Shown here piece after piece: positions 12,827 to 29,389 of a stretch of DNA of 64,000 bases. A program made the translations under genes and the position numbers. The stretch's first letter is position 1; every line of letters starts with the position of its first letter. Below the pieces are notes generated by a model, which was not told the DNA's origin, did not search any database, and saw nothing but the letters and a program-made list of their open reading frames with translations. The DNA lies in the IMG/VR virus record IMGVR_UViG_3300034012_003212, positions 186,001 to 250,000 of that record; one strand, 5' to 3'.

Positions 12827-13222
12827 TTACACCATCCTCAATTTGTGCTTCAGCCTCTCGGGGATCACACCAGGTTCATCCTCGTGGCCGTAGAACCCTG
12901 TTTCTGAACCATAAAAGATCTTTTCTCCCATATGAAGGTCATCAGGCAGCTTCGTGAGTCCTGTACAGCCATTAAGATGCAGATACCCTCCCACAATGAG
13001 ACCATTAGGAAGTCTTGCGATCCCTGTGCAGTCAATAAGATTCAAATACCCATCCACCCTGAGACCCTCAGGAAGCCTCGTGAGTCCTGTGCACATAAAG
13101 AGATCCAAATCCCCATTCACCCTGACGGACTCAAGGGACCCAAATGAATCCAAAGCCTCCTGGGAACAATACTCAAGGCGCACCCTCGTTTCTACTTGTA
13201 TCTTTATCTTCTTCTTTCTCAT
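12827..13222 (-). CDS. capped LRR protein, 3 repeats
   Basis: Same architecture, MRKKKIK start variant. Confidence 0.9.
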   Translation of the reverse strand: MRKKKIKIQVETRVRLEYCSQEALDSFGSLESVRVNGDLDLFMCTGLTRLPEGLRVDGYLNLIDCTGIARLPNGLIVGGYLHLNGCTGLTKLPDDLHMGEKIFYGSETGFYGHEDEPGVIPERLKHKLRMV

Positions 13223-13248
13223 GTCTTGTTTCTATTTTGGAATCACAA

Positions 13249-13650
13249 CTACCACATCTTCAACTTGTCCCGTAGGTGGTCAGGGATCACACCAGGCTCA
13301 TCCTTATGTTTAAAGAACCCTGTGTGTGAGTTATACCATATCTTTGCACCTACAGTGAGACCCTCAGGCAGCTTCTTGATCCCTTTGCAATATGAGAGAT
13401 TCAGAATTTCTCCTACTATGAGATCTCTAGGAATCTCTGTCGTTGTATCACGTAGAATCAGACCCTCTTTCACCCTGAGATCTCTAGGAAGCTCTTTGAG
13501 CCCTACACAACCAGCGAGATTCAGGTACCCATTCACCCTGAGACCCTCTATCCTTCTTAAGGAGTTCAAGGCCTGCCTAGAACACTCCATTAGAGACACA
13601 ATAGTAAGCTCAGGTACTTGTATTTTTCCATTTATTTCTGTCATGCTCAT
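13249..13650 (-). CDS. capped LRR protein, 3 repeats (diverged)
   Basis: Same architecture, more diverged framework. Confidence 0.88.
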   Translation of the reverse strand: MSMTEINGKIQVPELTIVSLMECSRQALNSLRRIEGLRVNGYLNLAGCVGLKELPRDLRVKEGLILRDTTTEIPRDLIVGEILNLSYCKGIKKLPEGLTVGAKIWYNSHTGFFKHKDEPGVIPDHLRDKLKMW

Positions 13651-13671
13651 GTTTTATTTATTTTTTATTTA

Positions 13672-14244
13672 TTAATGCCATCTCTTCAACCTTTCCTTCA
13701 GATGGTTAGGGATCACTCCCCGCTTGTCCTTACTTTTAGAGAACCCTGTGACTGAGTTATACCAGATCTTTCCTACCACCTGGAGATCTTCAGGCAGCTT
13801 AGTGATCCCTTCACAACCGCGTAGATCCAGATCCTTTCTAACTATGAGGTCATCAGGAAGCTCCGTGAGCCCTGTGCAATTGCATAGATCCAGATCCTTT
13901 CTAACTATGAGGTCATTAGGAAGCTCCGTGAGCCCTTCACAATTACTGAGTGTTAGGCTCCCTCCTACAACAAGACCCTCAGGCAACTCTGTGAGCCCTG
14001 TGCAATCTTCTAGATCCAGTCTCTCTCCTACAACAAGACCCTCAGGCAGCTCTGTGAGCCCTGCACAGTCTTGGAAAAACAGACTCCCACTCACCTTTAG
14101 ATCATCAGGCAGCCCTGTGCAGCTGACGAGACCTATATTCCCTTTCACCCTTAGAGTTCCGATCTTCCTTAAGGAGTCAATAGCCTCACGAGAACAACTT
14201 CCGGCATTCACTTTCGTGTAATCTTCTACATTTATTGTTACCAT
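13672..14244 (-). CDS. capped LRR protein, 6 repeats
   Basis: Same architecture with internal repeat duplications. Confidence 0.9.
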   Translation of the reverse strand: MVTINVEDYTKVNAGSCSREAIDSLRKIGTLRVKGNIGLVSCTGLPDDLKVSGSLFFQDCAGLTELPEGLVVGERLDLEDCTGLTELPEGLVVGGSLTLSNCEGLTELPNDLIVRKDLDLCNCTGLTELPDDLIVRKDLDLRGCEGITKLPEDLQVVGKIWYNSVTGFSKSKDKRGVIPNHLKERLKRWH

Positions 14245-14269
14245 ATTCAGTTTCTATTTTGGAATCCCT

Positions 14270-14659
14270 TTAATATTTCCTCAACTTGCACTTCAGGTGC
14301 TTAGGAATCACACCGGGCACATGCACACGGATATAGAACCCTGTGTCTGAATTATAATATATAACTCCTATCAGATGAAGATCTTTAGGCAGCTTCGTGA
14401 TCCCTGTGCAATTTCTGAGGTTCAGAAGCCCTCCCACGGTGAGGCCATCAGGCAGCTTCTTGAGTCCTGCACAATAATAGAGACTCAGGTTCCCTCCCAC
14501 AGTAAGGCCATCAGGCAGCTTCGTGAGGCCTGTGCAACCCACCAAATACAAACCCCCATTCACCTTAGGGGACTCAAGGGACCCAAATGAATCCAAAGCC
14601 TCTTTGGAACACTCTCTAAGGACCACTAACGTTTCTTTTCTTACCTTTATTTCTATCAT
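14270..14659 (-). CDS. capped LRR protein, 3 repeats (mosaic)
   Basis: Each repeat matches a different plus-array gene. Confidence 0.9.
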   Translation of the reverse strand: MIEIKVRKETLVVLRECSKEALDSFGSLESPKVNGGLYLVGCTGLTKLPDGLTVGGNLSLYYCAGLKKLPDGLTVGGLLNLRNCTGITKLPKDLHLIGVIYYNSDTGFYIRVHVPGVIPKHLKCKLRKY

Positions 14660-14681
14660 ATTCAGTTTCTATTTTGGAATC

Positions 14682-15140
14682 TTATTTATATTTCTTCAAC
14701 TTGTGTTTCAGTCTGTCAGGGATCACACCGGGCACATGCTCATGGCCATAGAACCCTGTCAATCCATTATAGTAAATTGTTTCACCCACATGAAGGTCAT
14801 CAGGCAGCTTAGTGATCCCTGAGCAACCATAGAGAAACAAATACCCCACCATGAGGTCATCAGGCAGCTCCGTGAGCCCTGTGCAGCCTACTAGATTCAA
14901 ATACCCATTCACCATGAGATACACGGGCAATTTTTTGAGCCCCTTGCGGCCACTAATATCCAAATCCCCATTCACCCTGAGGCCCCCAGACAGCTTCGTG
15001 AGCCCCTTGCAATCATAGAGACTCAAATGCCCATTCACCTTGAGGGCGTCAATCCTTCCTAAGGAGTCAATAGCCTCCTGAGAACAGCCCCTAAGGTTCA
15101 CTGTTGTTTCTTCTTCTACATTTATTTCTATCATATTCAC
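14682..15140 (-). CDS. capped LRR protein, 4 repeats
   Basis: Same architecture. Confidence 0.9.
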   Translation of the reverse strand: MNMIEINVEEETTVNLRGCSQEAIDSLGRIDALKVNGHLSLYDCKGLTKLSGGLRVNGDLDISGRKGLKKLPVYLMVNGYLNLVGCTGLTELPDDLMVGYLFLYGCSGITKLPDDLHVGETIYYNGLTGFYGHEHVPGVIPDRLKHKLKKYK

Positions 15141-15159
15141 TTTATATTTTGGAATCCCT

Positions 15160-15744
15160 TTACACCATCCTCAACTTGTGCTTCAGCCTCTCGGGGATCA
15201 CACCAGGTTCATGCTCATGGTCATAGAACCCCGTGTATGAATTATACCAGATGACTCCATCTACATTAAGATCATCAGGCAGCTTAGTGATCCCCTTGCA
15301 ATCATAGAGATCCAAATCCCCATTCACCTTGAGTCCATCAGGCAGCTTAGTGATCCCCTTGCAATCATAGAGACTCAAATACCCATTCACCTTGAGACCG
15401 TCAGGCAGCCCTGTGAGCCTTATGCAATGATTGAGAGCCAAATCCCCATTCACCATAAGATCATCAGGCAGCTTCGTGATCCCTGTGCAACCATAGAGAT
15501 CCAGATGCCTTCCAACCTTAAGATCTTTGGGCAGCTTCGTGAGCCCTGTGCAACCACGAAGACTCAAATACCCAGCCACCATGAGATCATCAGGCAGCTT
15601 CTTTATCCCTGTGTGTTTCCATAGACCCAGATCCCCATTCACCTTGACAACCTCAAGGGACCCAAATGAATCCAAAGCCTCTTGGGAACACCTTCCAAGG
15701 TTCACTATTGTTTTTTCTTGTATCTTTATCTTCTTCTTTCTCAT
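15160..15744 (-). CDS. capped LRR protein, 6 repeats
   Basis: Same architecture; first LRR gene of minus array. Confidence 0.9.
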   Translation of the reverse strand: MRKKKIKIQEKTIVNLGRCSQEALDSFGSLEVVKVNGDLGLWKHTGIKKLPDDLMVAGYLSLRGCTGLTKLPKDLKVGRHLDLYGCTGITKLPDDLMVNGDLALNHCIRLTGLPDGLKVNGYLSLYDCKGITKLPDGLKVNGDLDLYDCKGITKLPDDLNVDGVIWYNSYTGFYDHEHEPGVIPERLKHKLRMV

Positions 15745-15780
15745 GTCTAGTTTCTATTTTGGAATCCAACGAACCCTAAT

Positions 15781-15945
15781 CTACACAAAATACCAGTGTG
15801 ATCGTGCAGCTTCTTCGTATTCTTCTTCGTCCTCTTCATCCTCGTCTTCGTAGTCCTCTTCGTACTCATCAGAATCATCAGGAGGAAAGAACCACGGGGC
15901 GGTGGGCCTTACGAACACTGCGAACTTTGTCTCGGGGTCTTTCAT
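15781..15945 (-). CDS. 54-aa highly acidic peptide heading the minus LRR operon
   Basis: MKDPETKF...DDSDEYEEDYEDEDEEDEEEYEE...HWYFV; GATATATA box 5 nt before ATG. Confidence 0.7.
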   Translation of the reverse strand: MKDPETKFAVFVRPTAPWFFPPDDSDEYEEDYEDEDEEDEEEYEEAARSHWYFV

Positions 15946-15950
15946 GGTTT

Positions 15951-15958
15951 TATATATC
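15951..15958 (-). promoter_or_regulatory. putative late promoter GATATATA (minus LRR array)
   Basis: GATATATA-AAACC-ATG, same 5-nt spacing as at 45298 and 57921. Confidence 0.6.
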
Positions 15959-16055
15959 ACGCGGGGCGTGGTGTTACATTGTGCTACAGGGAGGCTGGGG
16001 TGGAAGAGAGGGCCCCAGGGGGAACGCGCGCCAGGATTGACCAGGTGACTCGAAA

Positions 16056-16080
16056 GGGAAAATGGGTGGGGTAACATGGG
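16056..16080 (+). other. canonical G-quadruplex motif
   Basis: GGG-AAAAT-GGG-T-GGGG-TAACAT-GGG fits G3N1-7 x4. Confidence 0.6.
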
Positions 16081-16198
16081 TATGATGAGTTTCATTAGAC
16101 CTGGGTGGAACAGTAGTGTCAGAAAATGAACAGGGGTAAAGGGTCGGGGGTTTTTTAAAAAAACATTTATATTGTATCAACCTCATCCGCTTTCCGCT

Positions 16199-16347
16199 CT
16201 CCTGGGCAAAAAGTGCCCTGGTTGTGCCCATTCACATATCACCCTCATGGGCAAAACGTTCCGTGGCTGCGCCTTTTTGTATACCGTACCCTCCTGGGCA
16301 AAAAGTTCTATGGCCCGGGCGAGTCCACTTACTGTGCCCTCCTGGGC
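16199..16347 (+). repeat. four regularly spaced CTCCTGGGC(AAAAAGT) repeats
   Basis: Copies at 16199, 16244, 16291, 16339; copies 1 and 3 identical over 16 nt. Confidence 0.65.
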
Positions 16348-16877
16348 CCTCAGTCCTGGTCCTTGGTCCTTGGTCCTGATTGTCTTGAGGGCCTGTGCGA
16401 GTGTGTCCTGACAGAACAGAGGGGTGGAACTGATTCATCTACTCTGTTCTCAGGTTTCCTTGTCTTTTTTCTTCTTTCTCTCTGTGGGTGTGGGTGGATC
16501 TTCTGGATCCTGTGCCCCCTTTTGATCTTCTCTCTCTCTCTTTCTTTCCTTTCTTCCAGGCTGGGTTGGGTGTGAGTGTGAGTGTGAGAGGAGGGTCATT
16601 CCTTTTTCTGGTCCTTCTGGTTGTTGGTCGGTGGGCACACAGAGAGAGTGGGGGGTTCTGGCATCTTGGAGGGTTTTTTTTTGGAGGGGGAGGGGGAGGG
16701 GGGTGTGAGTAAAAATGTTATTTTTGTTATTTTTGTTAGTTGGAGTCTTCTTCCCGGGTCTGATCATCAGAGGGAAGATGTTGGGCCGTTGTGGTTATGA
16801 AGAGAAGCTGATCCGTCATCGGGCACAGGGGCGATGATTTTAATGGCAGAAGGTTCCATCAGGGGTGGTTTATTTTT

Positions 16878-16885
16878 GATATATA
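16878..16885 (+). promoter_or_regulatory. putative late promoter GATATATA (plus LRR array)
   Basis: GATATATACAGC 12-mer identical to that upstream of the portal gene. Confidence 0.6.
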
Positions 16886-16941
16886 CAGCCCACCGTGGAT
16901 TATGAATAGACGGCGCGCGCTAGGTGAAATAAAAACTGAAT

Positions 16942-17460
16942 ATGATAGAAATAAATGTAAGAAAAGAAACGTTAGTGTACCTTAGAGAGTGTTCCAAAGA
17001 GGCTTTGGATTCATTTGGGTCCCTTGAGGCCCTTAAGGTGAATGGGCATTTGGATCTCTATTATTGCACTGGGCTCAAGAAGCTGCCTGATGGCCTAATG
17101 GTGAATGGGGATCTGAATCTCTATGGCTGCACAGGACTCACGAAGCTGCCTGATGATCTTAAGGTTGGAAAGCATCTGATTCTATGGAGTTGCCCGGGGC
17201 TCACAGAGCTGCCTGATGATCTCAAGGTGAATGGGAGTCTGAATATATGGAATTGCACGGGCCTCACGAAGCTGCCTGAAGGGCTCAAGGTTGAAGGGAC
17301 TCTGGATCTATGGTATTGCACAGGGATCACGAAGCTGCCTGAAGATCTTCAGGTGGAAGGATTCATATATTATAATGAAGGCACAGGGTTCTATGGACAT
17401 ATGGATGAGCCTGGCGTTATCCCTAACCACCTGAAGAACAAGTTGAAGAAACGTAAATAA
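16942..17460 (+). CDS. capped LRR protein, 5 repeats
   Basis: N-cap, 21-aa LRRs, C-cap. Confidence 0.9.
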   Translation: MIEINVRKETLVYLRECSKEALDSFGSLEALKVNGHLDLYYCTGLKKLPDGLMVNGDLNLYGCTGLTKLPDDLKVGKHLILWSCPGLTELPDDLKVNGSLNIWNCTGLTKLPEGLKVEGTLDLWYCTGITKLPEDLQVEGFIYYNEGTGFYGHMDEPGVIPNHLKNKLKKRK

Positions 17461-17476
17461 GACTTTAAAATAGAAA

Positions 17477-17878
17477 GTGAATATGATGGAAATAGAGGTA
17501 GATGTAGAAACGAGTGTGGTCCTCCGAAGGTGTTCCCAAGAGGCTTTGGATTCATTTGGGTCTCTTGAGGCCGTCAAGGTTAATGGGGATTTGGGTCTGC
17601 ACCGTTGCACAGGGCTCACGGAGCTGCCTGATGATCTCAAGGTGGATGGGTATTTGAGTCTATATGGTTGCCCGGGGATCAAGAAGCTTCCTGGGGGCCT
17701 CAGTGTGAATGGGGACCTGGATCTAGGTCATTGTCCAGGGATCAAGGATCTTCCTGAAGATCTTCAGGTGGAAGGAAGCATATATTATAATTCAAAGACA
17801 GGGTTCTCTGGCCATGAGGACGAGCCTGGCGTGATCCCTGATCATCTGAAGAACAAATTGGAAAAATATGGTAGATGA
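17477..17878 (+). CDS. capped LRR protein, 3 repeats
   Basis: N-cap, 21-aa LRRs, C-cap. Confidence 0.9.
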   Translation: MNMMEIEVDVETSVVLRRCSQEALDSFGSLEAVKVNGDLGLHRCTGLTELPDDLKVDGYLSLYGCPGIKKLPGGLSVNGDLDLGHCPGIKDLPEDLQVEGSIYYNSKTGFSGHEDEPGVIPDHLKNKLEKYGR

Positions 17879-17900
17879 GATTCCAAAATAGAAACTGAAC

Positions 17901-18290
17901 ATGACAGAAATAAAGGTAAAAGAAAAAACACTAGTGAAACTTAGTTGGTGTTCTCAGGAGGCTTTGGATTCATTTGGGTCCCTTGAGGCCCTTAAGGTGA
18001 ATGGGGGGCTGAGTCTCTATTATTGTGTAGGCATCAAGAAGCTGCCTGATGATCTCAAGGTGAATGGATATTTGAATCTCACCAATTGCGCAGGGCTCAC
18101 AGAGCTGCCTGATGGACTCCATGTGAAAGTTAGTGTGATTCTTTATGGTTGCTTAGGGATCACGAAGCTGCCTGATGACCTTCATGTGGGAGAAGAGATC
18201 TGGTATAATTCATACACGGGGTTCTACGGCCGTGTGCATGTGCCCGGTGTGATCCCTAAGCACCTGAAGCGCAAGTTGAAGAAATTTTAA
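17901..18290 (+). CDS. capped LRR protein, 3 repeats
   Basis: N-cap, 21-aa LRRs, C-cap. Confidence 0.9.
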   Translation: MTEIKVKEKTLVKLSWCSQEALDSFGSLEALKVNGGLSLYYCVGIKKLPDDLKVNGYLNLTNCAGLTELPDGLHVKVSVILYGCLGITKLPDDLHVGEEIWYNSYTGFYGRVHVPGVIPKHLKRKLKKF

Positions 18291-18314
18291 GAGATTCCAA
18301 AATAGAAACTGAAT

Positions 18315-18734
18315 ATGAGAAAGAAGAAGATAAAGATACAAGAGAAAACAATAGTGCACCTCTGGAATTGTTCCCAAGAGGCTTTGGATTCATTTGGGTC
18401 CCTTGAGGCCGTCAAGGTGAATGGCGATCTGCGTCTCAATTATTGCACAGGGATCACGAAGCTGCCTGATGGACTCAAGGTGAATGGGTATTTGAGTCTT
18501 ATTGGCTGCACAGGACTCACGAAGTTGCCTGATGGCCTCAAGGTGGATGGGAATTTGAATCTCTTTATGTGTACAGGACTCGCGAAGCTGCCTGAAGATC
18601 TTCAGGTGGAAGGAGTCATATATTATGATTCAGACACGGGGTTCTCTGGCCATGAGCATGAACCTGGTGTGATCCCTACAAGGCTGAAGCACAAGTTGAA
18701 GAAATGGGAGATGAGATTCCAAAATAGAAACTGA
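18315..18734 (+). CDS. capped LRR protein, 3 repeats, read-through tail
   Basis: GAG where siblings have TAG extends ORF through spacer (EMRFQNRN). Confidence 0.9.
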   Translation: MRKKKIKIQEKTIVHLWNCSQEALDSFGSLEAVKVNGDLRLNYCTGITKLPDGLKVNGYLSLIGCTGLTKLPDGLKVDGNLNLFMCTGLAKLPEDLQVEGVIYYDSDTGFSGHEHEPGVIPTRLKHKLKKWEMRFQNRN

Positions 18735-18736
18735 AT

Positions 18737-19126: not shown

Positions 19127-19151
19127 AGGGATTCCAAAATAGAAACTGAAT

Positions 19152-19607: not shown

Positions 19608-19627
19608 TTCCAAAATAGAAACTGAAT

Positions 19628-19954: not shown

Positions 19955-19979
19955 AGGGATTCCAAAATAGAAACTGAAT

Positions 19980-22177: not shown

Positions 22178-22201
22178 GAGATTCCAAAATAGAAACTGAA
22201 T

Positions 22202-22594: not shown

Positions 22595-22601
22595 ATAGAA
22601 T

Positions 22602-23129: not shown

Positions 23130-23151
23130 GATTCCAAAATAAAAACAGAAC

Positions 23152-23541
23152 ATGATAGAAATAGAGGTAAGAAAAGAAACGAAGATGTACCTTAGTGGGT
23201 GTTCCCAAGAGGCTTTGGATTCATTTGGGTCCCTCAGGGCCCTTAAGGTGAATGGGGATTTGAATCTCCTATTTTGTGTAGGGCCCACGAAGCTGCCCGA
23301 TGGGCTCAAGGTGAATATGGGTTTGAATCTTATTGGCTGCACAGGGCTCACGAAGCTGCCTGATGGACTCACTGTTGGAATGAATTTGTTTCTCTATGGT
23401 TGCTCAGGGATCACGAAGCTGCCTGAAGATCTTCAGGTGGAAGGAAGAATATATTATAATTCAGAGACAGGGTTCTATGGTCATGAGGATGAGCTTGGTG
23501 TGATCCCTGAGAGGCTGAAACACAAGTTGGAAAAATGGTAG
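23152..23541 (+). CDS. capped LRR protein, 3 repeats
   Basis: N-cap, 21-aa LRRs, C-cap. Confidence 0.9.
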   Translation: MIEIEVRKETKMYLSGCSQEALDSFGSLRALKVNGDLNLLFCVGPTKLPDGLKVNMGLNLIGCTGLTKLPDGLTVGMNLFLYGCSGITKLPEDLQVEGRIYYNSETGFYGHEDELGVIPERLKHKLEKW

Positions 23542-23567
23542 ATGAGATTCCAAAATAAAAACTGAAT

Positions 23568-23957
23568 ATGATAGAAATAGATGTAGAAGAAGAAACAATA
23601 GTGGTCCTTAGATATTGTTCCCAAGAGGCTTTGGATTCATTGGGAACGCTTGACGTCCTCAAGGTGAACGGGGGGTTGTTTCTCTATAGTTGCACAGGGC
23701 TCACTGAGCTGCCTGATGATCTTAAGGTGAATGGGAGTCTGAATCTATATAATTCCGAAGAACTCACAAGACTTCCTGATGGCCTTAGGGTAGCGGGGCG
23801 GTTGGATCTTAGGTATTGTGCAGGAATAACAATGCTGCCTGAAGATCTCAATGTAGATGGAGGCATCTGGTATAATTCAGAAACAGGGTTCTTTGACCGT
23901 AAGGATGAACCTGGTGTGATCCCTGATCATTTGAAGAACAAGTTGATGAAATTTTAA
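23568..23957 (+). CDS. capped LRR protein, 3 repeats
   Basis: N-cap, 21-aa LRRs, C-cap. Confidence 0.9.
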   Translation: MIEIDVEEETIVVLRYCSQEALDSLGTLDVLKVNGGLFLYSCTGLTELPDDLKVNGSLNLYNSEELTRLPDGLRVAGRLDLRYCAGITMLPEDLNVDGGIWYNSETGFFDRKDEPGVIPDHLKNKLMKF

Positions 23958-23981
23958 GAGATTCCAAAATAGAAACTGAAT

Positions 23982-24371
23982 ATGATAGAAATAAATGTAA
24001 AACCAAGCACGCATGTGCAACTTCGATGGTGTTCCCAGGCGGCTTTAGATTCTCTGGGAATGCTTGACACACTCAGGGTGGATGGGGATTTAAATTTCTA
24101 TACTTGCAGAGGACTTACAGGGCTATCTGATGATATAAATGTGAAAGGGACTCTGAATCTCAGTTTCTGCACAGGGCTTACAGAGCTTCCTGATGGTCTC
24201 ACTGTGAAATGGGGCCTGGCTCTTTTTGGTTGCAAAGGGATCACGAAGCTGCCTGAAGATCTTCAGGTGGAAGGAGTCATATATTATAATGAAGGCACAG
24301 GGTTCTATGGACATATGGATGAGCCTGGCGTGATCCCTAACCACCTGAAGAACAAGTTGAAGAAATTTTAA
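23982..24371 (+). CDS. capped LRR protein, 3 repeats
   Basis: N-cap, 21-aa LRRs, C-cap. Confidence 0.9.
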   Translation: MIEINVKPSTHVQLRWCSQAALDSLGMLDTLRVDGDLNFYTCRGLTGLSDDINVKGTLNLSFCTGLTELPDGLTVKWGLALFGCKGITKLPEDLQVEGVIYYNEGTGFYGHMDEPGVIPNHLKNKLKKF

Positions 24372-24395
24372 GAGATTCCAAAATAGAAACTAGAC

Positions 24396-24851
24396 ATGAG
24401 AAAGAAGAAGATTAAAGTACAAGAAAAAACGAGTGTGGACATTCGAAGGTGTTCACAAGAGGCTTTGGATTCATTTGGGTCCCTCAGCGCCCTCAAGGTG
24501 AATGGGGATCTGTTTCTAGACTGGCGCGAAATGCCCGCTAAGCTGCCTGATGATCTCATAGTTAGAGGAGGTGCGCATCTTAGTAGATGCAGAAGGCTCA
24601 TAGAGCTTCCTATGGGTCTAATTGTGGGAGAGCATCTGGATCTAAGATGGTGCGAAAGACTCACAGAGCTGCCTAATGATCTAATTGTAGGAGAGAATCT
24701 ATATCTCTATGGCTGTGTGGAGATCAAAAAGCTCCCTGGAGATCTTACAGTTTGTGGAGACATCTACTATGATTCAGAGACAGGGTTCTATGGTCGTGTG
24801 GATGAACCTGATGTGATCCCTAAGCACCTGAAGGGTAAATTGTGGAGATAA
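24396..24851 (+). CDS. capped LRR protein, 4 repeats
   Basis: N-cap, 21-aa LRRs, C-cap. Confidence 0.9.
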   Translation: MRKKKIKVQEKTSVDIRRCSQEALDSFGSLSALKVNGDLFLDWREMPAKLPDDLIVRGGAHLSRCRRLIELPMGLIVGEHLDLRWCERLTELPNDLIVGENLYLYGCVEIKKLPGDLTVCGDIYYDSETGFYGRVDEPDVIPKHLKGKLWR

Positions 24852-24873
24852 GATAATAAAATATGAACTGGGT

Positions 24874-25275
24874 ATGAGAAAGAAGAAGATAAAGATAAAG
24901 GTAAGAAAAGAAACGAAGGTGTACCTTAGTGGGTGTTCTCAGGAAGCTTTGGATTCATTTGGGTCCCTCAACGCCCTCAAGGTGGATGGGTATCTGGGTC
25001 TATGGTATTGCGCAGGGCTCAAGAAGCTGCCTGATGGACTCATGGTGGGCGGGGTTTTGAATCTCGGTTATTGCATAGGACTCACGAGGCTGCCCGATGG
25101 ACTCATTGTCGCAGGTGGGTTGAATCTCGGTCATTGCATAGGACTCACGAGTCTGCCTGATGATCTTAATGTGGGAGAAGTCATCTGGTATAATCTAAAA
25201 ACAGGGTTCTGTGGCCATGAGCATGAACCTGGCGTGATCCCTGATCATCTGAAGAACAAATTGCACAAACATTAA
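24874..25275 (+). CDS. capped LRR protein, 3 repeats
   Basis: N-cap, 21-aa LRRs, C-cap. Confidence 0.9.
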   Translation: MRKKKIKIKVRKETKVYLSGCSQEALDSFGSLNALKVDGYLGLWYCAGLKKLPDGLMVGGVLNLGYCIGLTRLPDGLIVAGGLNLGHCIGLTSLPDDLNVGEVIWYNLKTGFCGHEHEPGVIPDHLKNKLHKH

Positions 25276-25300
25276 AGAGATTCCAAAATAGAAACTGAGT

Positions 25301-25690
25301 ATGATGACGATAAAGGTAAAAGAATACACGAAGGTGGACTTTCGAAGGTGTTCCCAAGAGGCTTTGGATTCATTTGGGTCCCTTGAGGCCCTCAAGGTGG
25401 ATGGGGGTTTGTATTTGGTGGGTTGCACAGGCCTCATGAGGTTGCCTGATGGACTCAAGGTGAATAGGGGTCTGTATTTGGTGGGTTGCACAGGCCTCAC
25501 GAAGCTTCCTGATGGCCTAAATGTGAGACATAGACTGGAGGTCACATGGTGCTCAGGAATCACAAAGCTTCCCTATGATCTTCACGTGGGTGGATACATC
25601 TACTATAATTCAAAGACGGGGTTCTATGGCCATGAGGATGAACCTGGAGTGATCCCTGAGAGGCTAAAGCACAAGTTATATAAATTCTAG
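25301..25690 (+). CDS. capped LRR protein, 3 repeats
   Basis: N-cap, 21-aa LRRs, C-cap. Confidence 0.9.
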   Translation: MMTIKVKEYTKVDFRRCSQEALDSFGSLEALKVDGGLYLVGCTGLMRLPDGLKVNRGLYLVGCTGLTKLPDGLNVRHRLEVTWCSGITKLPYDLHVGGYIYYNSKTGFYGHEDEPGVIPERLKHKLYKF

Positions 25691-25715
25691 AGAGATTTCA
25701 AAATAAAAACTGAAT

Positions 25716-26108
25716 ATGATAGAAATAAATGTAGAAGGACACACGACGGTGGACCTTAGTGATTGTTCCCAAGAGGCTTTGGATTCATTGGGAACGCTTG
25801 ACACACTCAGGGTGAATGGGGGTCTGAGTTTTTTTAGGAATTGCTCAGGGCTCACAAGGCTGCCTGATGGACTCATGGTGAATGGGAATTTGAATCTCGA
25901 TCATTGCATAAGGCTCACAGGGCTTCCTGGTGGTCTCAAGGTGGATGGGCATTTGAGTCTATGGGATTGCAAGGGCCTCACGAAGCTGCCTGATGACCTT
26001 CATGTGGGAGAAGAGATCTATTATGATTCGGACACAGGGTTCTATGGCCGTGTGCATGTGCCCGGTGTGATTCCTAAGCACCTGAAGCGCAAGTTATATA
26101 AATTCTAG
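25716..26108 (+). CDS. capped LRR protein, 3 repeats
   Basis: N-cap, 21-aa LRRs, C-cap. Confidence 0.9.
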   Translation: MIEINVEGHTTVDLSDCSQEALDSLGTLDTLRVNGGLSFFRNCSGLTRLPDGLMVNGNLNLDHCIRLTGLPGGLKVDGHLSLWDCKGLTKLPDDLHVGEEIYYDSDTGFYGRVHVPGVIPKHLKRKLYKF

Positions 26109-26133
26109 AGAGATTCCAAAATAAAAACTGAAT

Positions 26134-26541
26134 ATGATAGAAATAAATGTAAGAAAAGAAACGTCGGTGAACCTTCGAAGGTGTTCCCAGGAGGCTTTGG
26201 ATTCATTGGGAACGCTTGACACACTCAGGGTGAATGGGGGGTTGTTTCTCTATAATTGCACAGGACTCACGAAGCTGCCTGAGGGACTCAAGGTGAATAG
26301 GGGTTTGTATCTTAATGGATGCGCAGGGCTCAGAGAGCTGCCTGATGGACTCACTGTTGGAATGAATTTGGTTCTCTATGGTTGCTCAGGGCTCACGAAG
26401 CTGCCTGAAGATCTTAATGTGGGAGAAGTCATCCGGTCTGATTCAAACACAGGGTTCTCTGGCCGTGTGCATGTGCCTGGTGTGATCCCTAAGCACCTGA
26501 AGGATAAGTTAAGTATCGCATGGTTATCATGGATATCATAG
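26134..26541 (+). CDS. capped LRR protein, 3 repeats, SIAWLSWIS tail
   Basis: Tail identical to 28555..28962. Confidence 0.9.
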   Translation: MIEINVRKETSVNLRRCSQEALDSLGTLDTLRVNGGLFLYNCTGLTKLPEGLKVNRGLYLNGCAGLRELPDGLTVGMNLVLYGCSGLTKLPEDLNVGEVIRSDSNTGFSGRVHVPGVIPKHLKDKLSIAWLSWIS

Positions 26542-26572
26542 TAGAGATAAGATTCCAAAATAGAAACTGAAT

Positions 26573-27025
26573 ATGACAGAAATAAAGGTAAAAGAAAAAA
26601 CGACAGTGAATCTTCAATGGTGTTCCCAAGAGGCTTTGGATTCATTTGGGTTCCTTGAAGCCGTCAAGGTGAATGGGGATTTGGATTTCTATCGTTGCAA
26701 AAGACTCACGAAGCTGCCTGTTGATCTCAAGGTGGCAGGGGAACTGCGTCTCAATCGGTGCACAGAGCTCACAGAGCTACCCGACGATCTCATAGTGGGA
26801 GGGGGCATCTATCTCTATAGCTGCGAAAAGATCACGAAGCTGCCTAGGGGTCTCATAGTGGGAGAGTGGATGAATCTAGGTCAATGCAAAGGGATCACGA
26901 AGCTGCCTAAAGATCTCACAGTTTTTGATGACATATGGTATAACCCAGAGACGGGATTCTCTGGCAGTGTGCATGAGCCTGGTGTGATCCCTGTCCACCT
27001 GAAGCACAAGTTGAAAAACTATTAA
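26573..27025 (+). CDS. capped LRR protein, 4 repeats
   Basis: N-cap, 21-aa LRRs, C-cap. Confidence 0.9.
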   Translation: MTEIKVKEKTTVNLQWCSQEALDSFGFLEAVKVNGDLDFYRCKRLTKLPVDLKVAGELRLNRCTELTELPDDLIVGGGIYLYSCEKITKLPRGLIVGEWMNLGQCKGITKLPKDLTVFDDIWYNPETGFSGSVHEPGVIPVHLKHKLKNY

Positions 27026-27049
27026 GAGATTCCAAAATAAAAACTGAAT

Positions 27050-27508
27050 ATGAGAAAGAAGAAGATACAGATACGAAAAGAAACGCATGTGCAACTTCGA
27101 TGGTGTTCCAAAGAGGCTTTGGATTCATTTAAGTCCCTTGATGCCGCCAGTGTGAATGGGAATTTGAATCTTAGTGGTTGCACAGGACCCACGAAGCTTC
27201 CTGATGGTCTAATCGTAGGAGGGTTTTTATATCTCGGCAATTGCACAGGGCTCAAGAAGCTGCCTGATGGACTCATGGTGAATGGGGATTTGAATCTGTA
27301 TGGTTGCTCAGAGCTCACGAAGCTTCCCGATGGCCTCAGGGTGATTGGGGATCTGGATCTCTGTTATTGCCCAGGGATCAAGGATCTTCCTGCGGATCTC
27401 ATTGTTGACGGTGTTATCACCTATGATTCAGACACGGGGTTCTATGGCCGTGTGCATGTGCCTGGTGTGATCCCTAAGCACCTGAAGAACAAATTGCACA
27501 AATATTAA
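27050..27508 (+). CDS. capped LRR protein, 4 repeats
   Basis: N-cap, 21-aa LRRs, C-cap. Confidence 0.9.
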   Translation: MRKKKIQIRKETHVQLRWCSKEALDSFKSLDAASVNGNLNLSGCTGPTKLPDGLIVGGFLYLGNCTGLKKLPDGLMVNGDLNLYGCSELTKLPDGLRVIGDLDLCYCPGIKDLPADLIVDGVITYDSDTGFYGRVHVPGVIPKHLKNKLHKY

Positions 27509-27533
27509 AGAGATTCTAAAATAGAAACTGAAT

Positions 27534-28055
27534 ATGCTGGAAATACAGGTAAAAGAAGAAACGAAAGTGGACCTTGGGTATTGTTCACAAGAATCACTTG
27601 ATTCCTTGGTGACTATCAAGCGCCTCAATGTGAACGGGGATTTGGATCTATTGGGTTGCCCAGGGATCACAGAGCTGCCTGAAGATCTTAAAGTGGGAGG
27701 GAATCTGGATCTACGTTGGTGTGACGGGCTCACAGAGCTGCCTAAAGAGCTCACCGTCGCTGGGAAACTGAATCTAGAGAATTGCACAGGACTCACGAGG
27801 CTGCCTGAGGGACTCCGTGTGAATGTGTATTTGTTTCTCTATGGTTGCTCAGGGATCAAGAAGCTTCCTGGGGGCCTCAGTGTGAATGGGGACCTGGATC
27901 TAGGTCATTGTCCAGGGATCAAGGATCTTCCTGAAGATCTTCAGGTGGAAGGAAGCATATATTATAATTCAGGGACAGGATTCTTTGGCCATATGCAAGA
28001 GCCCGGTGTGATCCCTGATCATCTGAAGAACAAATTGGAAAAATATGGTAGATGA
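27534..28055 (+). CDS. capped LRR protein, 5 repeats
   Basis: Shares 120-nt identical tract with 17477..17878. Confidence 0.9.
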   Translation: MLEIQVKEETKVDLGYCSQESLDSLVTIKRLNVNGDLDLLGCPGITELPEDLKVGGNLDLRWCDGLTELPKELTVAGKLNLENCTGLTRLPEGLRVNVYLFLYGCSGIKKLPGGLSVNGDLDLGHCPGIKDLPEDLQVEGSIYYNSGTGFFGHMQEPGVIPDHLKNKLEKYGR

Positions 28056-28077
28056 AATTCCAAAATAGAAACTGAAT

Positions 28078-28530
28078 ATGAGAAAGATAAAGGTAAAAAA
28101 AGAAACGAGGGTGAACCTTCAATTGTGTTCCCAAGAGGCTTTAGATTCATTTGGGTATCTCAGCGCCCTCAGGGTGGATGGGTACCTTAATCTCGCTTAT
28201 TGCGCGGGGGCCACGAGGATTCCCGAGGGGCTCAAGGTGAATGGGGATCTGAATCTTAATGGTTGTGTAGGGATCACAAGTCTGCCTGATGGATTCAGGG
28301 TTGGAGGGGATCTGATTCTGTATAAATGTTCAGGGTTCGCGGAGCTGCCTGATGATCTCACTGTTGCAGGGGAATTGTTTCTATGGGGTTGTACAGGGAT
28401 CACAAGTCTGCCTGACGATCTCCATGTGGCAGGAAACATACTTTATGATTCAAAGACAGGATTCTTTGGCCATGTGCACGAGCCTGGTGTGATACCCGGT
28501 AACCTGAAGAACAAATTGAAAGAAATATAA
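28078..28530 (+). CDS. capped LRR protein, 4 repeats
   Basis: N-cap, 21-aa LRRs, C-cap. Confidence 0.9.
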   Translation: MRKIKVKKETRVNLQLCSQEALDSFGYLSALRVDGYLNLAYCAGATRIPEGLKVNGDLNLNGCVGITSLPDGFRVGGDLILYKCSGFAELPDDLTVAGELFLWGCTGITSLPDDLHVAGNILYDSKTGFFGHVHEPGVIPGNLKNKLKEI

Positions 28531-28554
28531 GAGATTCCAAAATAGAAACTGAAT

Positions 28555-28962
28555 ATGATGACGATAAATGTAAAAGAAGAAACTAGGGTGATACTTTATG
28601 AGTGTTCTCAGAAAGCTTTGGATTCATTTGGATCACTCAGCCGGATGAGAGTGGGTGGGTTTCTGAGTTTCTATGGTTGCACAAAGCTCAAAAAGCTGCC
28701 CGATGGCCTCAGGGTACGAGGGGGTTTACAAATTACGTGGTGTGTAGGACTCACGAGGCTGCCCGATGGACTCATTGTCGCAGGTGGGTTGAATCTCGGG
28801 GCTTGCGAAGAACTCACAAGTATCCCTCAAGATCTCCAGGTGGGCGGCACCATCCTCCATGATCAAGGAACGGGGTTCTATGGCCACGAGAATGAGCCTG
28901 GTGTGATACCCGAGATGCTGAAGGATAAGTTAAGTATCGCATGGTTATCATGGATATCATAG
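28555..28962 (+). CDS. capped LRR protein, 3 repeats, SIAWLSWIS tail
   Basis: N-cap, 21-aa LRRs, C-cap. Confidence 0.9.
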   Translation: MMTINVKEETRVILYECSQKALDSFGSLSRMRVGGFLSFYGCTKLKKLPDGLRVRGGLQITWCVGLTRLPDGLIVAGGLNLGACEELTSIPQDLQVGGTILHDQGTGFYGHENEPGVIPEMLKDKLSIAWLSWIS

Positions 28963-28993
28963 TAGAGATAAGATTCCAAAATAGAAACTGAAT

Positions 28994-29389
28994 ATGATAG
29001 AAATAAATGTAAGAAAAAAATACACGAGGGTGGACCTTAGTGAGTGTTCCCAAGAGGCTTTGGATTCATTTGGGTCCATTGAGACCCTCAAGGTGAATGG
29101 GGATCTGAGTCTTCGTGGTTGCTCAGGGCTCACAAGGCTGCCTGATGGCTCCACTGTGGGAGGCGGTTTGTATATTAGTGGTTGCACAGGACTCATAAAG
29201 CTGCCTGATGGCCTCACCGTGGGAGGGCTTCTGAACCTCAGAAATTGCACAGGGATCACAAGACTTCCTGAAGATCTTCAGGTGGGTGGAATGATCTGGT
29301 ATAGTCTAAAAACAGGGTTCTTTGGTCATAAGTATGATCCTGGCGTGATACCCGATAGGCTGAAACACAAGTTGGAAAACCGGTGGTAA
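28994..29389 (+). CDS. capped LRR protein, 3 repeats
   Basis: N-cap, 21-aa LRRs, C-cap. Confidence 0.9.
   Translation: MIEINVRKKYTRVDLSECSQEALDSFGSIETLKVNGDLSLRGCSGLTRLPDGSTVGGGLYISGCTGLIKLPDGLTVGGLLNLRNCTGITRLPEDLQVGGMIWYSLKTGFFGHKYDPGVIPDRLKHKLENRW

What the first reader, a model, noticed from the sequence alone, without database searches (positions are those of the whole stretch)
12978..28997. Units are mosaics: identical tracts swapped between distant genes and between the two inverted arrays
Seen: a 76-nt tract at 18900-18975 (+) is identical to 12978-13053 (-). A 120-nt tract at 17675-17794 equals 27852-27971. An 80-nt tract at 26497-26576 equals 28918-28997 and crosses a gene junction. 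Minus gene 14270..14659 has three repeats that each match a different plus gene (~25401-25436, ~22406-22470, ~29198-29259). Genes 12346..12801 and 19152..19607 are a near-paired 151-aa set, and their upstream neighbours share the 76-nt tract. Inference: ongoing gene conversion or template switching shuffles repeat modules combinatorially, probably through the phage's own UvsX/gp46/gp47 machinery encoded in this window. Tracts that cross junctions favour homologous over site-specific cassette exchange.
Basis: partly seen in the sequence, partly recalled or inferred. Interest (0 to 1): 0.85.

Follow-up and report, generated by a model that had tools for sequence, protein, structure and literature searches.

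The report
Recombining LRR gene array in jumbo phage
A 260-kb T4-like phage devotes about 27 kb to roughly 56 small leucine-rich-repeat genes in two head-to-head arrays, and these genes keep swapping pieces, gaining or losing whole units and apparently flipping between arrays by ordinary homologous recombination, which looks like a way of diversifying a set of binding proteins.

Summary
All three exact tracts (76, 120, 80 nt) sit at the stated coordinates. They are the top of a larger pattern: 409 exact matches of at least 30 nt, covering 45% of the core array.

The units are about 56 small LRR proteins: a conserved N-cap, 2-6 repeats of 21 aa, and a conserved C-cap. Nine lie on the minus strand (11389-15744) and about 47 on the plus strand (16942-38941).

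Site-order permutation tests show real mosaicism, not chance or simple duplication:
- Nearest-neighbour agreement between N-cap and C-cap is 0 of 42, against 11.2±2.4 in random site partitions.
- The PHI-type test gives z=-5.7.
- The longest run of matching polymorphic sites is 61, against a permutation maximum of 38.

Independent assemblies reproduce the window's tracts at 100% identity. They also show that genomes otherwise identical to the window differ by a whole unit, by repeat number, by short donor-matched patches, and by two inversion-type junctions between the arrays. Every breakpoint lies in a shared exact tract of 34-51 nt.

The attribution to UvsX/gp46/gp47 is plausible but untested. 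Breakpoints do not follow 63-nt module borders. What the proteins bind is unknown.

The parts
11389..15744 (-). Minus-strand array: 9 paralogous small LRR genes (129-194 aa), transcribed away from the central spacer
   Evidence: ORF map and module parsing
15745..16941 (.). Central spacer between the two divergent arrays. It has no family gene. It holds a 54-aa acidic ORF and G-rich and CT-rich low-complexity DNA.
   Evidence: Sequence read; weak promoter-like sites only
16942..32259 (+). Plus-strand array, exchanging core: 34 paralogous genes. Most share exact tracts of >=30 nt with up to 25 partners.
32253..38941 (+). Plus-strand array, diverged periphery: 13 more distant family members with no shared exact tract longer than 22 nt
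   Evidence: sequences
12978..13053 (-). 76-nt exact tract, minus copy (in gene 12827-); partner is 18900-18975(+) in gene 18737+
   Evidence: present in independent contig L009 and within the 100% match of L025
18900..18975 (+). 76-nt exact tract, plus copy
   Evidence: the gene pair is 77% identical outside the tract
17675..17794 (+). 120-nt exact tract, copy in gene 17483+ (repeats 2-3 of 3)
   Evidence: present in L009
27852..27971 (+). 120-nt exact tract, copy in gene 27534+ (repeats 4-5 of 5)
   Evidence: present in L006; aligned upstream blocks are 57-83% identical
26497..26576 (+). 80-nt exact tract crossing the 26134+/26573+ junction
   Evidence: present in L006
28918..28997 (+). 80-nt exact tract crossing the 28555+/28994+ junction
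   Evidence: present in L006
12346..13222 (-). Two-gene block (12827-, 12346-), the inverted counterpart of 18737-19607(+). It contains 100% tracts next to stretches of 60-87% identity.
   Evidence: Pairwise alignment; profiles
18737..19607 (+). Two-gene block (18737+, 19152+). The 3' end of 19152+ is replaced relative to its twin: it shares 94 nt exactly with 25716+ and 69 nt with 17901+.
12295..12334 (.). 40-nt junction homology (= 12771-12810) at which contig L009 lacks the 476-bp unit carrying gene 12346-
   Evidence: 0 mismatches in 8,541 nt and 5,961 nt on the two sides
12336..12375 (-). 40-nt homology (= 19578-19617, +) at which contig L026 joins gene 12346- to the plus-array genes 19628+ onward (inversion-type junction)
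15439..15472 (-). 34-nt homology (= 22874-22907, +) at which contig L010 fuses the 5' part of 22608+ to the 3' part of 15160-, giving an in-frame 192-aa hybrid gene
   Evidence: seen in one contig only
18681..18731 (+). 51-nt tract (= 20340-20390) at which L009 switches from the tail of 18315+ to the start of 20396+. This would delete four genes; only 28 nt lie beyond the junction, so the evidence is weak.
26164..26172 (+). Micro-conversion footprint: contig L020 differs here by 4 substitutions in 9 nt that reproduce the sequence of paralogues 22608+ and 11389-. There is only 1 other difference in 1,445 nt.
31391..31843 (+). Gene with four near-identical tandem 63-nt repeats; independent contigs show 63 nt (L006) or 126 nt (L007) fewer
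   Evidence: a JGI contig from another sample lists the 150-aa form
62740..63984 (-). UvsX-like recombinase
   Evidence: Pfam RecA 1.8e-12; PHROG 97 'UvsX-like recombinase' 3.2e-48
59594..60688 (-). SbcD/gp47-like nuclease subunit
   Evidence: PHROG 100, 3.8e-71
57927..59597 (-). SbcC/gp46-like ATPase subunit
   Evidence: PHROG 77, 1.7e-80

Best explanation
The region is a lineage-specific expansion of about 56 small leucine-rich-repeat (LRR) proteins in a 260-kb T4-like phage. The genes lie in two divergently oriented tandem arrays.

Each unit is a 22-nt family-specific leader, a conserved N-cap, 2-6 repeats of 63 nt, and a conserved C-cap.

Because the leader, the caps and the repeat scaffold stay similar in DNA, any two units offer stretches of perfect homology tens of bases long. 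Homologous recombination between misaligned units, within one genome or between genome copies in an infected cell, then produces four kinds of event:
(a) short non-reciprocal patches (gene conversion);
(b) unequal crossovers that add or remove whole units or single repeats;
(c) in-frame hybrid genes;
(d) inversion of the DNA lying between two units in opposite arrays.

Units that have diverged too far no longer take part (32253-38941 and a few core genes).

Shown: the mosaic structure; the clustering of strain differences; breakpoints lying in shared exact tracts; and amino-acid variation concentrated at the x positions of xLxLxxC on a confidently predicted solenoid.

Inferred: that the phage's UvsX/gp46/gp47 pathway carries out the exchange; and that the result is a diversified repertoire of binding proteins acting on host or competitor targets. 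I think they most likely act inside the cell, because there is no signal peptide and the one relative in a cultured phage sits among early accessory genes. I put that functional reading at about 0.4.
For: Anatomy.

Mosaicism inside the window:
- N-cap versus C-cap distances correlate at r=0.42, against 0.67±0.04 for 500 random site partitions.
- Nearest neighbours agree in 0 of 42 genes, against 11.2±2.4.
- The PHI-type test gives z=-5.7. The longest matching run is 61 against a permutation maximum of 38. 71 of 171 pairs are significant where 8.6 are expected.
- Modules of most genes point to 2-5 different partner genes.
- Identity is 100% inside tracts and 53-77% outside.
- Tract sharing between the inverted arrays equals that within arrays: 9.5% of pairs share >=40 nt, against 9.8% and 8.3%.

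Not an assembly artefact: L006 equals window 26122-31664 at 100%. L025 has 0 mismatches in 6,730 nt. L009 has 0 mismatches in 8,541 and 5,961 nt. A JGI contig from another sample has the same order of gene sizes.

Ongoing change:
- Unit indel at a 40-nt homology.
- Inversion-type junctions at 40-nt and 34-nt homologies, from two samples and two assembly sources.
- Repeat-number differences.
- Four substitutions in 9 nt matching two other paralogues.
- A 10-difference patch with a perfect donor.
- 142 of 156 strain differences lie in clusters.
- A strain with ~99% identical flanks has array genes only ~70-80% identical, built from exact tiles of 50-170 nt drawn from five or more window genes.

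Binding repertoire: pN/pS is 1.2-3.1 at repeat positions 1, 3, 5, 6, 8, 18 and 20, against 0.03-0.2 at scaffold positions. The AlphaFold2 model has pLDDT 92.5. The profile matches solved LRR proteins, with FlrP 8z5u at 4e-19 and the plant TNL/RNL LRRs next.

Machinery present.
Against: All comparison sequences are short-read metagenome contigs. No reads were examined, so each individual strain junction could still be a mis-join.
- The L010 hybrid is seen in one contig only.
- The reciprocal junctions were not found.
- The L009 end junction rests on 28 nt.

It is not known whether ENA analysis ERZ27272050 comes from a sample different from the window's JGI sample.

L009 and L026, both from that ENA analysis, cannot both be fitted into one simple rearranged genome. 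This implies a mixed population or an error in one of them.

Most dense difference patches have no good donor in this window. Their origin is therefore inferred, and import from other phage lineages is equally possible.

Likelihood tests of clade incongruence between N-cap and C-cap rejected nothing (lowest p=0.09).

pN/pS on repeats that recombine and are saturated at synonymous sites is only indicative.

Nothing shows expression, targets or location of the proteins, and nothing links the exchange to UvsX.
Confidence: 0.78

Rival explanations
1. The mosaics come mainly from recombination between different co-infecting phage lineages that carry different arrays. On this view array segments are imported, rather than exchanged among paralogues of one genome.
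For: The L004/L005/L017/L021 strain has ~99% identical flanks but array genes only 70-80% identical, with an extra gene and missing genes. Several dense difference patches have no good donor in the window. A separate divergent patch occurs in the flank at 2901-3100, which shows that patchwise import also happens outside the array.
Against: Within the window itself, paralogues share exact tracts, including between the inverted arrays. The cleanest strain patches do have perfect donors among the window's own paralogues. Unit indel and inversion-type junctions join sequences that are 100% identical to the window on both sides. This rival is a contributor rather than an alternative: the chemistry is the same.
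Confidence: 0.3
2. The shared tracts and alternative junctions are artefacts of short-read metagenome assembly across repeats.
For: All sequences are short-read assemblies. Contigs of related strains break inside the array. One junction rests on 28 nt and one hybrid is seen in one contig. L009 and L026 from one ENA analysis are hard to reconcile as a single genome.
Against: The window's tracts are reproduced base for base by other assemblies made with other software (contig names indicate k=141): L006, L009 and L025. The junction homologies (34-51 nt) are far shorter than those final k-mers, so a graph mis-join there is not expected. The mosaic signal within the window is spread over hundreds of tracts of 30-60 nt, well below read length. 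The L020 footprint is an internal patch, not a join.
Confidence: 0.07
3. Simple serial duplication followed by divergence, with the long identical tracts preserved by strong constraint on parts of the sequence.
For: The N-cap, the leader and the scaffold codons are conserved. Nearby genes are slightly more alike than distant ones (Mantel r=0.22 for the N-cap and 0.12 for the C-cap).
Against: The exact tracts include synonymous sites and the hypervariable repeat codons, and they differ from pair to pair. The phylogenetic signal depends on site order. No gene has the same closest relative at both ends. Tracts cross non-coding junctions.
Confidence: 0.04
4. A dedicated diversity generator acts on the array: a diversity-generating retroelement, or a site-specific invertase/shufflon.
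For: There are two inverted arrays with inversion-type junctions. Variation is focused on a binding face.
Against: No reverse transcriptase, integrase or invertase domain was found in the window ORFs scanned or in the precomputed annotations. Strain differences use all 12 substitution types, and 40 of 98 involve no adenine. Breakpoints lie at four different places in the unit with four different sequences. The rest of the 260-kb genome was not searched.
Confidence: 0.03

Closest known systems
Tandem multigene families shaped by ectopic gene conversion and unequal crossover (plant NLR/LRR resistance-gene clusters such as RPP8; PMC6771003)
   Same: Clustered paralogues encode LRR binding surfaces. 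Short exchanged tracts create mosaics. Copy number varies between close relatives. Amino-acid variation is concentrated on the solvent-exposed LRR positions. The repeat type here matches plant TNL/RNL LRRs in profile searches.
   Different: The genes are in a bacteriophage. The proteins are tiny (108-214 aa), consisting of the LRR alone with no NB-ARC or signalling domain. The arrays are two inverted blocks in a 260-kb genome. Change is visible between genomes with no point differences over many kilobases.
Cassette-based antigenic variation in bacteria (Borrelia vlsE/vls, Neisseria pilE/pilS). Comparison from general knowledge, not tested against those sequences.
   Same: Segmental, homology-guided, non-reciprocal transfer between related copies generates new combinations.
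   Different: There is no single expression site with silent, truncated cassettes. Every core unit here is a complete ORF with its own leader and ATG.
Lamprey variable lymphocyte receptors. Comparison from general knowledge.
   Same: An N-cap, a variable number of LRR modules and a C-cap; new combinations arise by copying through short homologies.
   Different: VLR assembly is a programmed somatic process acting on an incomplete gene and needs a cytidine deaminase. Nothing of the kind is seen here, and the change is evolutionary and at population level.
Lineage-specific expansions in large viruses: about 35 zinc-ribbon copies in Bacillus phage G (PMC7824862); FNIP/LRR and ankyrin families of giant eukaryotic viruses (e.g. 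CroV FNIP structure 7zal, listed)
   Same: One small repeat or domain family is amplified many-fold in one viral genome.
   Different: About 56 copies in a tailed phage. I found no description of mosaic exchange or strain-level turnover in a phage family of this kind in the papers searched.
FlrP, the small LRR protein of the Vibrio polar flagellar motor (PDB 8z5u; bioRxiv 10.64898/2025.12.04.692373)
   Same: This is the closest solved relative by sequence (profile E=4e-19). It is a small stand-alone beta-solenoid of 21-22-residue 'LPxGLxVxGxLxL' repeats that binds other proteins.
   Different: FlrP has a Sec signal peptide and is a single-copy cellular gene. The phage units have no signal peptide and have different caps. 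Foldseek similarity is weak (E=0.6).
LRR domains of NEL (IpaH/SspH-type) E3-ligase effectors
   Same: Long relatives found with the family profile carry this repeat type followed by a NEL domain (P0081, P0088). In those proteins the LRR is the target-recognition part (general knowledge).
   Different: The phage units have no NEL or any other catalytic domain.

Membership tests
Leucine-rich repeat (LRR) proteins | Tandem 20-30-residue repeats with the LxxLxLxx(N/C)xL core | tested here: met
   130 cleanly parsed 21-aa repeats with consensus DLNLYGCTGLTKLPDGLKVEG. L2, L4, C7, L13, P14, L17 and V19 are nearly invariant.
Leucine-rich repeat (LRR) proteins | Solenoid fold | tested here: met
   The AlphaFold2 model of 19152+ built with a 40-sequence alignment has pLDDT 92.5 and pTM 0.86, with one short strand per repeat. 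Foldseek hits are all LRR or beta-solenoid proteins, but only 1 reaches E<=0.001, a viral 'Leucine-rich repeat' protein.
Leucine-rich repeat (LRR) proteins | Significant sequence match to known LRR proteins or models | tested here: met
   Profile against PDB: FlrP 4e-19, RPP1 6e-14, Roq1 8e-9. Single sequences stay below Pfam's curated cut-offs: LRR_EndoS 20.6 and 22.6 bits against 27.9.
Multigene family evolving by ectopic homologous exchange (gene conversion / unequal crossover) | Statistical signal of recombination among paralogues | tested here: met
   Site-partition test 0 of 500; PHI-type z=-5.7; longest-run test 61 against a maximum of 38. AU clade tests were inconclusive.
Multigene family evolving by ectopic homologous exchange (gene conversion / unequal crossover) | Internal patches replaced while both flanks stay colinear, with the donor sequence present in another copy | tested here: met
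   L020: 4 of 4 clustered differences equal 22608+/11389-. L017: 10 of 10 differences equal the 23982+/16942+ C-cap. Other patches lack a donor in this window.
Multigene family evolving by ectopic homologous exchange (gene conversion / unequal crossover) | Copy-number change with breakpoints in homologous sequence | tested here: met
   A 476-bp unit is absent in L009 at a 40-nt exact homology. L006 and L007 lack 63 and 126 nt in gene 31391+. L017 has an extra gene.
Cassette-type antigenic variation (one expression site plus silent cassettes) | Silent, incomplete donor cassettes and a single expressed locus | tested here: not met
   All 43 core units are intact ORFs with an ATG and the same 22-nt leader.
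Diversity-generating retroelement | Reverse transcriptase and a template/variable repeat pair differing at adenines | tested here: not met
   No RT domain was found in the window ORFs scanned. The substitution spectrum is not adenine-specific. The remaining ~196 kb of the genome was not examined.
Site-specific inversion systems / shufflons | A dedicated recombinase and a conserved short crossover site at segment borders | tested here: not met
   No recombinase domain was found. The four breakpoints lie in four different sequences at different positions in the unit.
NEL (IpaH-type) effectors | C-terminal NEL E3-ligase domain after the LRR | tested here: not met
   The units end in a 29-33-residue cap with no Pfam match. 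NEL is present only in long relatives from other sources.
T4-type recombination machinery acting on the array | UvsX, gp46 and gp47 homologues are encoded, and exchange depends on them | not testable with these tools
   The genes are present. Dependence needs genetics.

The most novel reading that the evidence does not exclude
The two inverted arrays work as a phage-encoded, recombination-driven repertoire generator. Frequent conversion, unequal crossover and array-to-array inversion continually make new LRR binding surfaces, and possibly change which units lie next to the central spacer. A single phage population would then carry many variants of a host-interaction or counter-defence protein set. 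That would be a non-DGR route to targeted protein diversification in phages, similar in logic to LRR-based immune receptor repertoires.
Probability: 0.25. Interest if true: 0.85.

Novelty: new variant of a known kind. Interest (0 to 1): 0.64.

Why it matters
Phages are known to diversify host-interaction proteins by mutagenic retroelements, invertible segments and swapping of tail-fibre modules. A family of about 56 small LRR binders taking up about a tenth of a phage genome is a different strategy. The family turns over between genomes that are otherwise base-for-base identical. This resembles plant resistance-gene clusters or parasite surface-antigen families, which are normally associated with cellular organisms and giant viruses.

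If the proteins target host defence or surface components, the locus would be a natural library of binders with a conserved scaffold. It would also be a tractable system for measuring ectopic recombination rates and minimal homology lengths in a T4-like phage in nature.

It also matters practically. Such arrays break short-read assemblies and can be mistaken for errors.

Tried and rejected
- Megablast of 19 kb of the array against GenBank phages gave no match.
- tblastn of one unit against phages found only Edwardsiella phage Edno5, a single 247-aa gene in the early region.
- PHROGs gave no family for the units. Pfam hits for single units stay below the curated cut-offs.
- IMG/VR scans by protein and by a 23-nt conserved pattern returned only the source contig.
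- The JGI metagenome scan with the same pattern returned nothing, so that collection does not hold this lineage.
- Foldseek against PDB gave only LRR-like hits, none significant.
- AU tests of N-cap clades on C-cap data, and the reverse, had no power: lowest p=0.09, and constrained trees often scored better than the quick free search.
- An exact-donor search explained only 3 of 21 difference clusters, and the lenient search only a few more.
- The L010 hybrid protein and the L009 141-aa hybrid were each found in one contig only.
- The predicted reciprocal junctions are absent from all fetched loci.
- The phase of tract ends within the repeat showed no preference for module borders; it only followed codon variability.
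- The spacer showed no convincing promoter or terminator.
- The 330-kb relative contig has two dispersed members and no array.
- My first attempt to place the L009 indel used a wrong offset. It was corrected by exact walking.

Full report
WHAT IS THERE

The window is positions 186001-250000 of a 260,658-bp contig: IMG/VR UViG_3300034012_003212, which is also NCBI JBFDBI010003367.1.

The contig is a large T4-like phage. The window encodes:
- a UvsX-like recombinase (62740-63984);
- a DnaB-type helicase (61162-62466);
- SbcD/gp47-like (59594-60688) and SbcC/gp46-like (57927-59597) proteins;
- a T4-type portal (49924-51618);
- a head-closure protein (52270-52752);
- a gp55-like late sigma factor (53082-53432).

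Its UvsX is only 34-41% identical to the best GenBank phage hits, which are huge uncultured phages and the Lak phages. Megablast of the array finds nothing in GenBank phages.

Between 11389 and 38941 lie about 56 paralogous genes of 108-214 codons. Nine are on the minus strand (11389-15744) and about 47 on the plus strand (16942-38941). A 1.2-kb spacer separates them, so the two arrays point away from each other.

Each protein has:
- a 35-residue N-cap (MIEIxVxxETxVxLxxCSQEALDSFGSLxxxKVNG; some copies start MRKKKIK);
- 2 to 6 copies of a 21-residue repeat (consensus DLNLYGCTGLTKLPDGLKVEG);
- a C-cap (xIyYNSxTGFxGHEDEPGVIPxxLKxKL).

Each core gene is preceded by the same 22-nt leader, GATTCCAAAATAGAAACTGAAT. 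Its 12-nt core CAAAATAGAAAC occurs 35 times in the window (one mismatch allowed), against 0.73 expected by chance, and only in front of family genes. None of the 43 core genes has a Shine-Dalgarno-like motif, against 13 of 30 other genes.

THE PROTEINS

A profile of 40 members matches solved LRR proteins:
- the small flagellar-rod-binding protein FlrP of Vibrio (8z5u, E=4e-19; described in bioRxiv 10.64898/2025.12.04.692373);
- the LRR domains of plant TNL and helper NLR receptors (RPP1 6e-14, Roq1 8e-9).

AlphaFold2 with the paralogue alignment gives a confident short solenoid, with pLDDT 92.5. Foldseek returns LRR proteins only, mostly without significance. The best viral matches are small 'Leucine-rich repeat' proteins of uncultured tailed phages.

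The language-model atlas places the protein next to clusters of small viral hypothetical proteins, the largest with 1,437 members.

A profile search of 1.84 billion representatives finds 19,099 clusters at E<=0.001. The strongest are long multi-repeat proteins, some with a C-terminal NEL E3-ligase domain. Full-length matches that include both caps are essentially this phage's own genes.

So the repeat type is common, and the small capped format is widespread in phages. The unusual part is the array.

Within the repeat, amino-acid variation sits at positions 1, 3, 5, 6, 8, 18 and 20, where pN/pS is 1.2-3.1. The scaffold positions L2, L4, C7, L13, P14, L17 and V19 have pN/pS of 0.03-0.2 despite high synonymous diversity. 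This is the pattern expected for a diversified binding face on a fixed scaffold. The numbers are only indicative, because the repeats recombine and synonymous sites are near saturation.

CHECK OF THE OBSERVATION

All three tracts are exact at the stated coordinates. The three matches of gene 14270..14659 to three plus-strand genes are exact over 36, 47 and 62 nt.

Genes 12346- and 19152+ are 91% identical. Together with 12827- and 18737+ they form a colinear inverted two-gene block. In this block, stretches of 100% identity, including 70 nt across the gene junction, alternate with stretches of 60-87%.

The finding understates the pattern. There are 409 maximal exact matches of >=30 nt, 124 of >=40, 46 of >=50 and 21 of >=60. 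Of the 409, 137 link the two orientations, and 13 of >=40 nt span a gene junction. Tracts of >=30 nt cover 45% of the core array.

IS IT MORE THAN CHANCE OR SIMPLE DUPLICATION?

Average divergence between units is 26-27% in both caps. Outside the long tracts the same gene pairs are 53-77% identical.

Three tests that depend only on the order of sites agree:
- Splitting the concatenated cap alignment at the true N|C border gives a distance correlation of 0.42 and no gene with the same nearest relative at both ends. In 500 random site partitions the values are 0.67±0.04 (minimum 0.52) and 11.2±2.4 (minimum 3).
- On a gap-free 381-column alignment of the 19 three-repeat genes, a PHI-type statistic is 5.7 standard deviations below its permutation mean.
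- On the same alignment, the longest run of matching polymorphic sites is 61 against a permutation maximum of 38, and 71 of 171 pairs are individually significant at 0.05 where 8.6 are expected.

At module resolution, most genes draw their repeats' closest relatives from 2-5 different genes. The last repeat stays last (31 of 36), while internal repeats shift register freely.

Likelihood (AU) tests of clades across the two caps rejected nothing. The segments are 87-105 nt long and the test had no power. I do not count this for or against.

EVIDENCE FROM OTHER ASSEMBLIES

Exact-protein look-ups retrieved contigs of the same and closely related phages from other data sets.

(a) Confirmation of the window
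- L006 (ENA ERZ27272050) equals window 26122-31664 without a mismatch. It contains both 80-nt copies and one 120-nt copy.
- L009 (same ENA analysis, 27.7 kb) equals 3794-12334 and 12771-18731 without a mismatch.
- L025 (JGI 3300042518) equals the reverse complement of window 6346-13075 without a mismatch.
- A 47.7-kb contig of JGI 3300059473 has the same order of gene sizes from 25301+ onward.

(b) Structural differences at short homologies
- L009 lacks the 476-bp unit that carries gene 12346-. The two sides overlap in a 40-nt exact repeat.
- L026 joins gene 12346- to genes 19628+ onward through a 40-nt homology shared by the twin genes 12346- and 19152+.
- L010 fuses the 5' part of 22608+ to the 3' part of 15160- through a 34-nt homology, giving an in-frame 192-aa hybrid.
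- L026 and L010 are the junctions expected from crossovers between units in opposite arrays, which would invert the DNA between them. They come from different samples and assembly sources.
- L006 lacks 63 nt and L007 lacks 126 nt in the internally repetitive gene 31391+.

(c) Conversion footprints
- L020 differs from the window by one isolated base and by four substitutions within 9 nt. Those four recreate the sequence of two other paralogues.
- Over 8,577 colinear nucleotides in six contigs (L007, L017, L018, L020-L022), 142 of 156 differences lie in clusters.

(d) A divergent strain
L004 and L005 are ~99% identical to the window across about 9.5 kb of flank. Identity falls to about 70-80% from the first array gene onward. 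Their array genes are tiled by exact pieces of 50-170 nt from 16942+, 17483+, 27534+, 23982+, 28078+ and others. L017, L021 and L022 show an extra gene and missing genes.

LIMITS OF THAT EVIDENCE
- No reads were seen.
- The L010 hybrid occurs in one contig.
- The reciprocal junctions were not found.
- The L009 end junction rests on 28 nt.
- L009 and L026 come from one ENA analysis and cannot both belong to one simply rearranged genome. Either the population is mixed or one contig is wrong.
- I could not establish whether that ENA analysis is a different sample from the window's.
- Most dense patches have no good donor in this window.

The junction homologies are much shorter than the final k-mers implied by the contig names (k119-k141), so graph mis-joins are not expected there. 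I judge it likely, not certain, that at least some of these variants are real.

MECHANISM

The simplest account is homologous recombination between misaligned units. The conserved leader, caps and repeat scaffold provide perfect homology of tens of bases between almost any two core units, in either orientation.

Sharing of tracts is as common between the inverted arrays as within them, so distance and orientation do not matter. That fits exchange among many replicating genome copies.

Units that have diverged no longer share tracts: the 13 genes at 32253-38941 and a few core genes such as 13249-, 13672-, 28078+, 29415+ and 30910+. This suggests a homology threshold.

T4 recombination is known to work on homologies of about 50 bp. 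This is from my own knowledge of T4 genetics and was not checked here. The window encodes the UvsX, gp46 and gp47 homologues. The link between them and the exchange is an inference.

Copy-choice template switching during replication would leave the same traces and cannot be separated from strand exchange with these data.

A dedicated mechanism is unlikely:
- No reverse transcriptase or recombinase domain was found in the window ORFs scanned or in the precomputed annotations.
- There is no adenine bias.
- Breakpoints occur at different places in the unit.

FUNCTION

Function is unknown. My best guess, at about 0.4, is a repertoire of intracellular binders directed at host or competitor proteins. 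The reasons:
- variation is concentrated on the binding-face positions;
- there is no signal peptide or virion-attachment domain;
- all units are intact;
- the only relative in a cultured phage (Edno5_0047) lies among early accessory genes, between the repressor and the exo/RecT genes.

A role as exchangeable receptor-binding parts of the virion is not excluded. LRR domains are proposed to serve host recognition in phage Goslar (bioRxiv 10.64898/2026.04.21.720040).

COMPARISON AND NOVELTY

The process is the one known from plant NLR clusters and other tandem families. It differs from cassette systems of antigenic variation, because there is no silent-donor and expression-site arrangement. It also differs from retroelement or invertase systems.

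In the papers searched I found no description of a phage LRR array or of mosaic turnover in a phage multigene family. The largest jumbo-phage expansion mentioned is about 35 zinc-ribbon copies in phage G (PMC7824862).

I therefore rate it a new variant of a known kind. The mechanism itself is unsurprising for a T4-like phage. The scale, the architecture and the turnover at near-zero background divergence are what make it interesting.

Noticed in passing
window 15745-16941: The spacer between the arrays has unusual composition. It has a 54-codon ORF on the minus strand (15781-15945) with a very acidic C-terminal half. It also has runs such as GGGGGAGGGGGAGGGGGG and CTCTCTCT, and a motif CCTCCTGGGCAAAAAGT repeated three times around 16200-16350. 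The longer minus-strand ORFs there are proline/glycine-rich and look spurious. There were no Pfam or PHROG hits.
   Followed up: partly
window 18681-18734, 20340-20399, 26497-26541, 28918-28962: Four units have lost the usual stop codon and read on into the conserved leader. This gives the C-terminal extensions ...EMRFQNRN(RI) in 18315+ and 19980+, and ...SIAWLSWIS in 26134+ and 28555+. The extended tails are themselves shared exact tracts.
   Followed up: partly
window 11389-31870, upstream of each gene: Family genes have no Shine-Dalgarno-like motif (0 of 43), while 13 of 30 other genes of >=100 codons do. The family-specific 22-nt leader may carry its own start signal or promoter. The host is unknown.
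   Followed up: partly
window 2901-3100: In the otherwise ~99% identical flank, both related strains (L004, L005) drop to 78% identity in this 200-nt stretch, around the overlap of ORFs 2520-2948 and 2932-3156. This is a locally replaced patch outside the array.
   Followed up: no
window 7327-7400 and 8172-8246: Two tRNA genes on the minus strand: tRNA-Met (CAT) and tRNA-Arg (CCT).
   Followed up: yes
window 21384-21497 and 31512-31727: There are recent tandem duplications of single 63-nt repeats inside genes. Repeats 3 and 4 of 21190+ share 51 nt exactly at an offset of 63. Gene 31391+ has four near-identical repeats with a 92-nt exact self-overlap.
   Followed up: partly
window 35147-38941: The last members of the plus array (for example 36883+, 37338+ and 38579+) are barely recognisable as family members, and the gaps between genes widen (136, 130 and 325 nt). 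This looks like the old, decaying end of the expansion.
   Followed up: no
L011 (JGI 3300045518 contig of 330,928 bp), 8232-8858 and 10001-10627: Another huge-phage contig has two dispersed 208-aa relatives of the family on opposite strands, next to an S8 peptidase, a reprolysin-like protease and an RNA ligase. There is no array.
   Followed up: partly
window 3235-4059, 4412-4999, 5968-6942, 7412-7816: The left flank encodes a BRCT-domain protein, a muramidase, an NAD-dependent sugar epimerase/dehydratase and a pentapeptide-repeat protein. These come from the precomputed Pfam hits on the syntenic contigs.
   Followed up: no
L009 versus L026 (both ENA ERZ27272050): The two contigs imply incompatible neighbourhoods. 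L009 has no 12346- unit beside 11810- and a join from 18315+ to 20396+. L026 has 12346- followed by 19628+. The exact 19152+ protein was on record only for the source contig. Either several array variants coexist in that sample, or one contig is mis-joined.
   Followed up: partly
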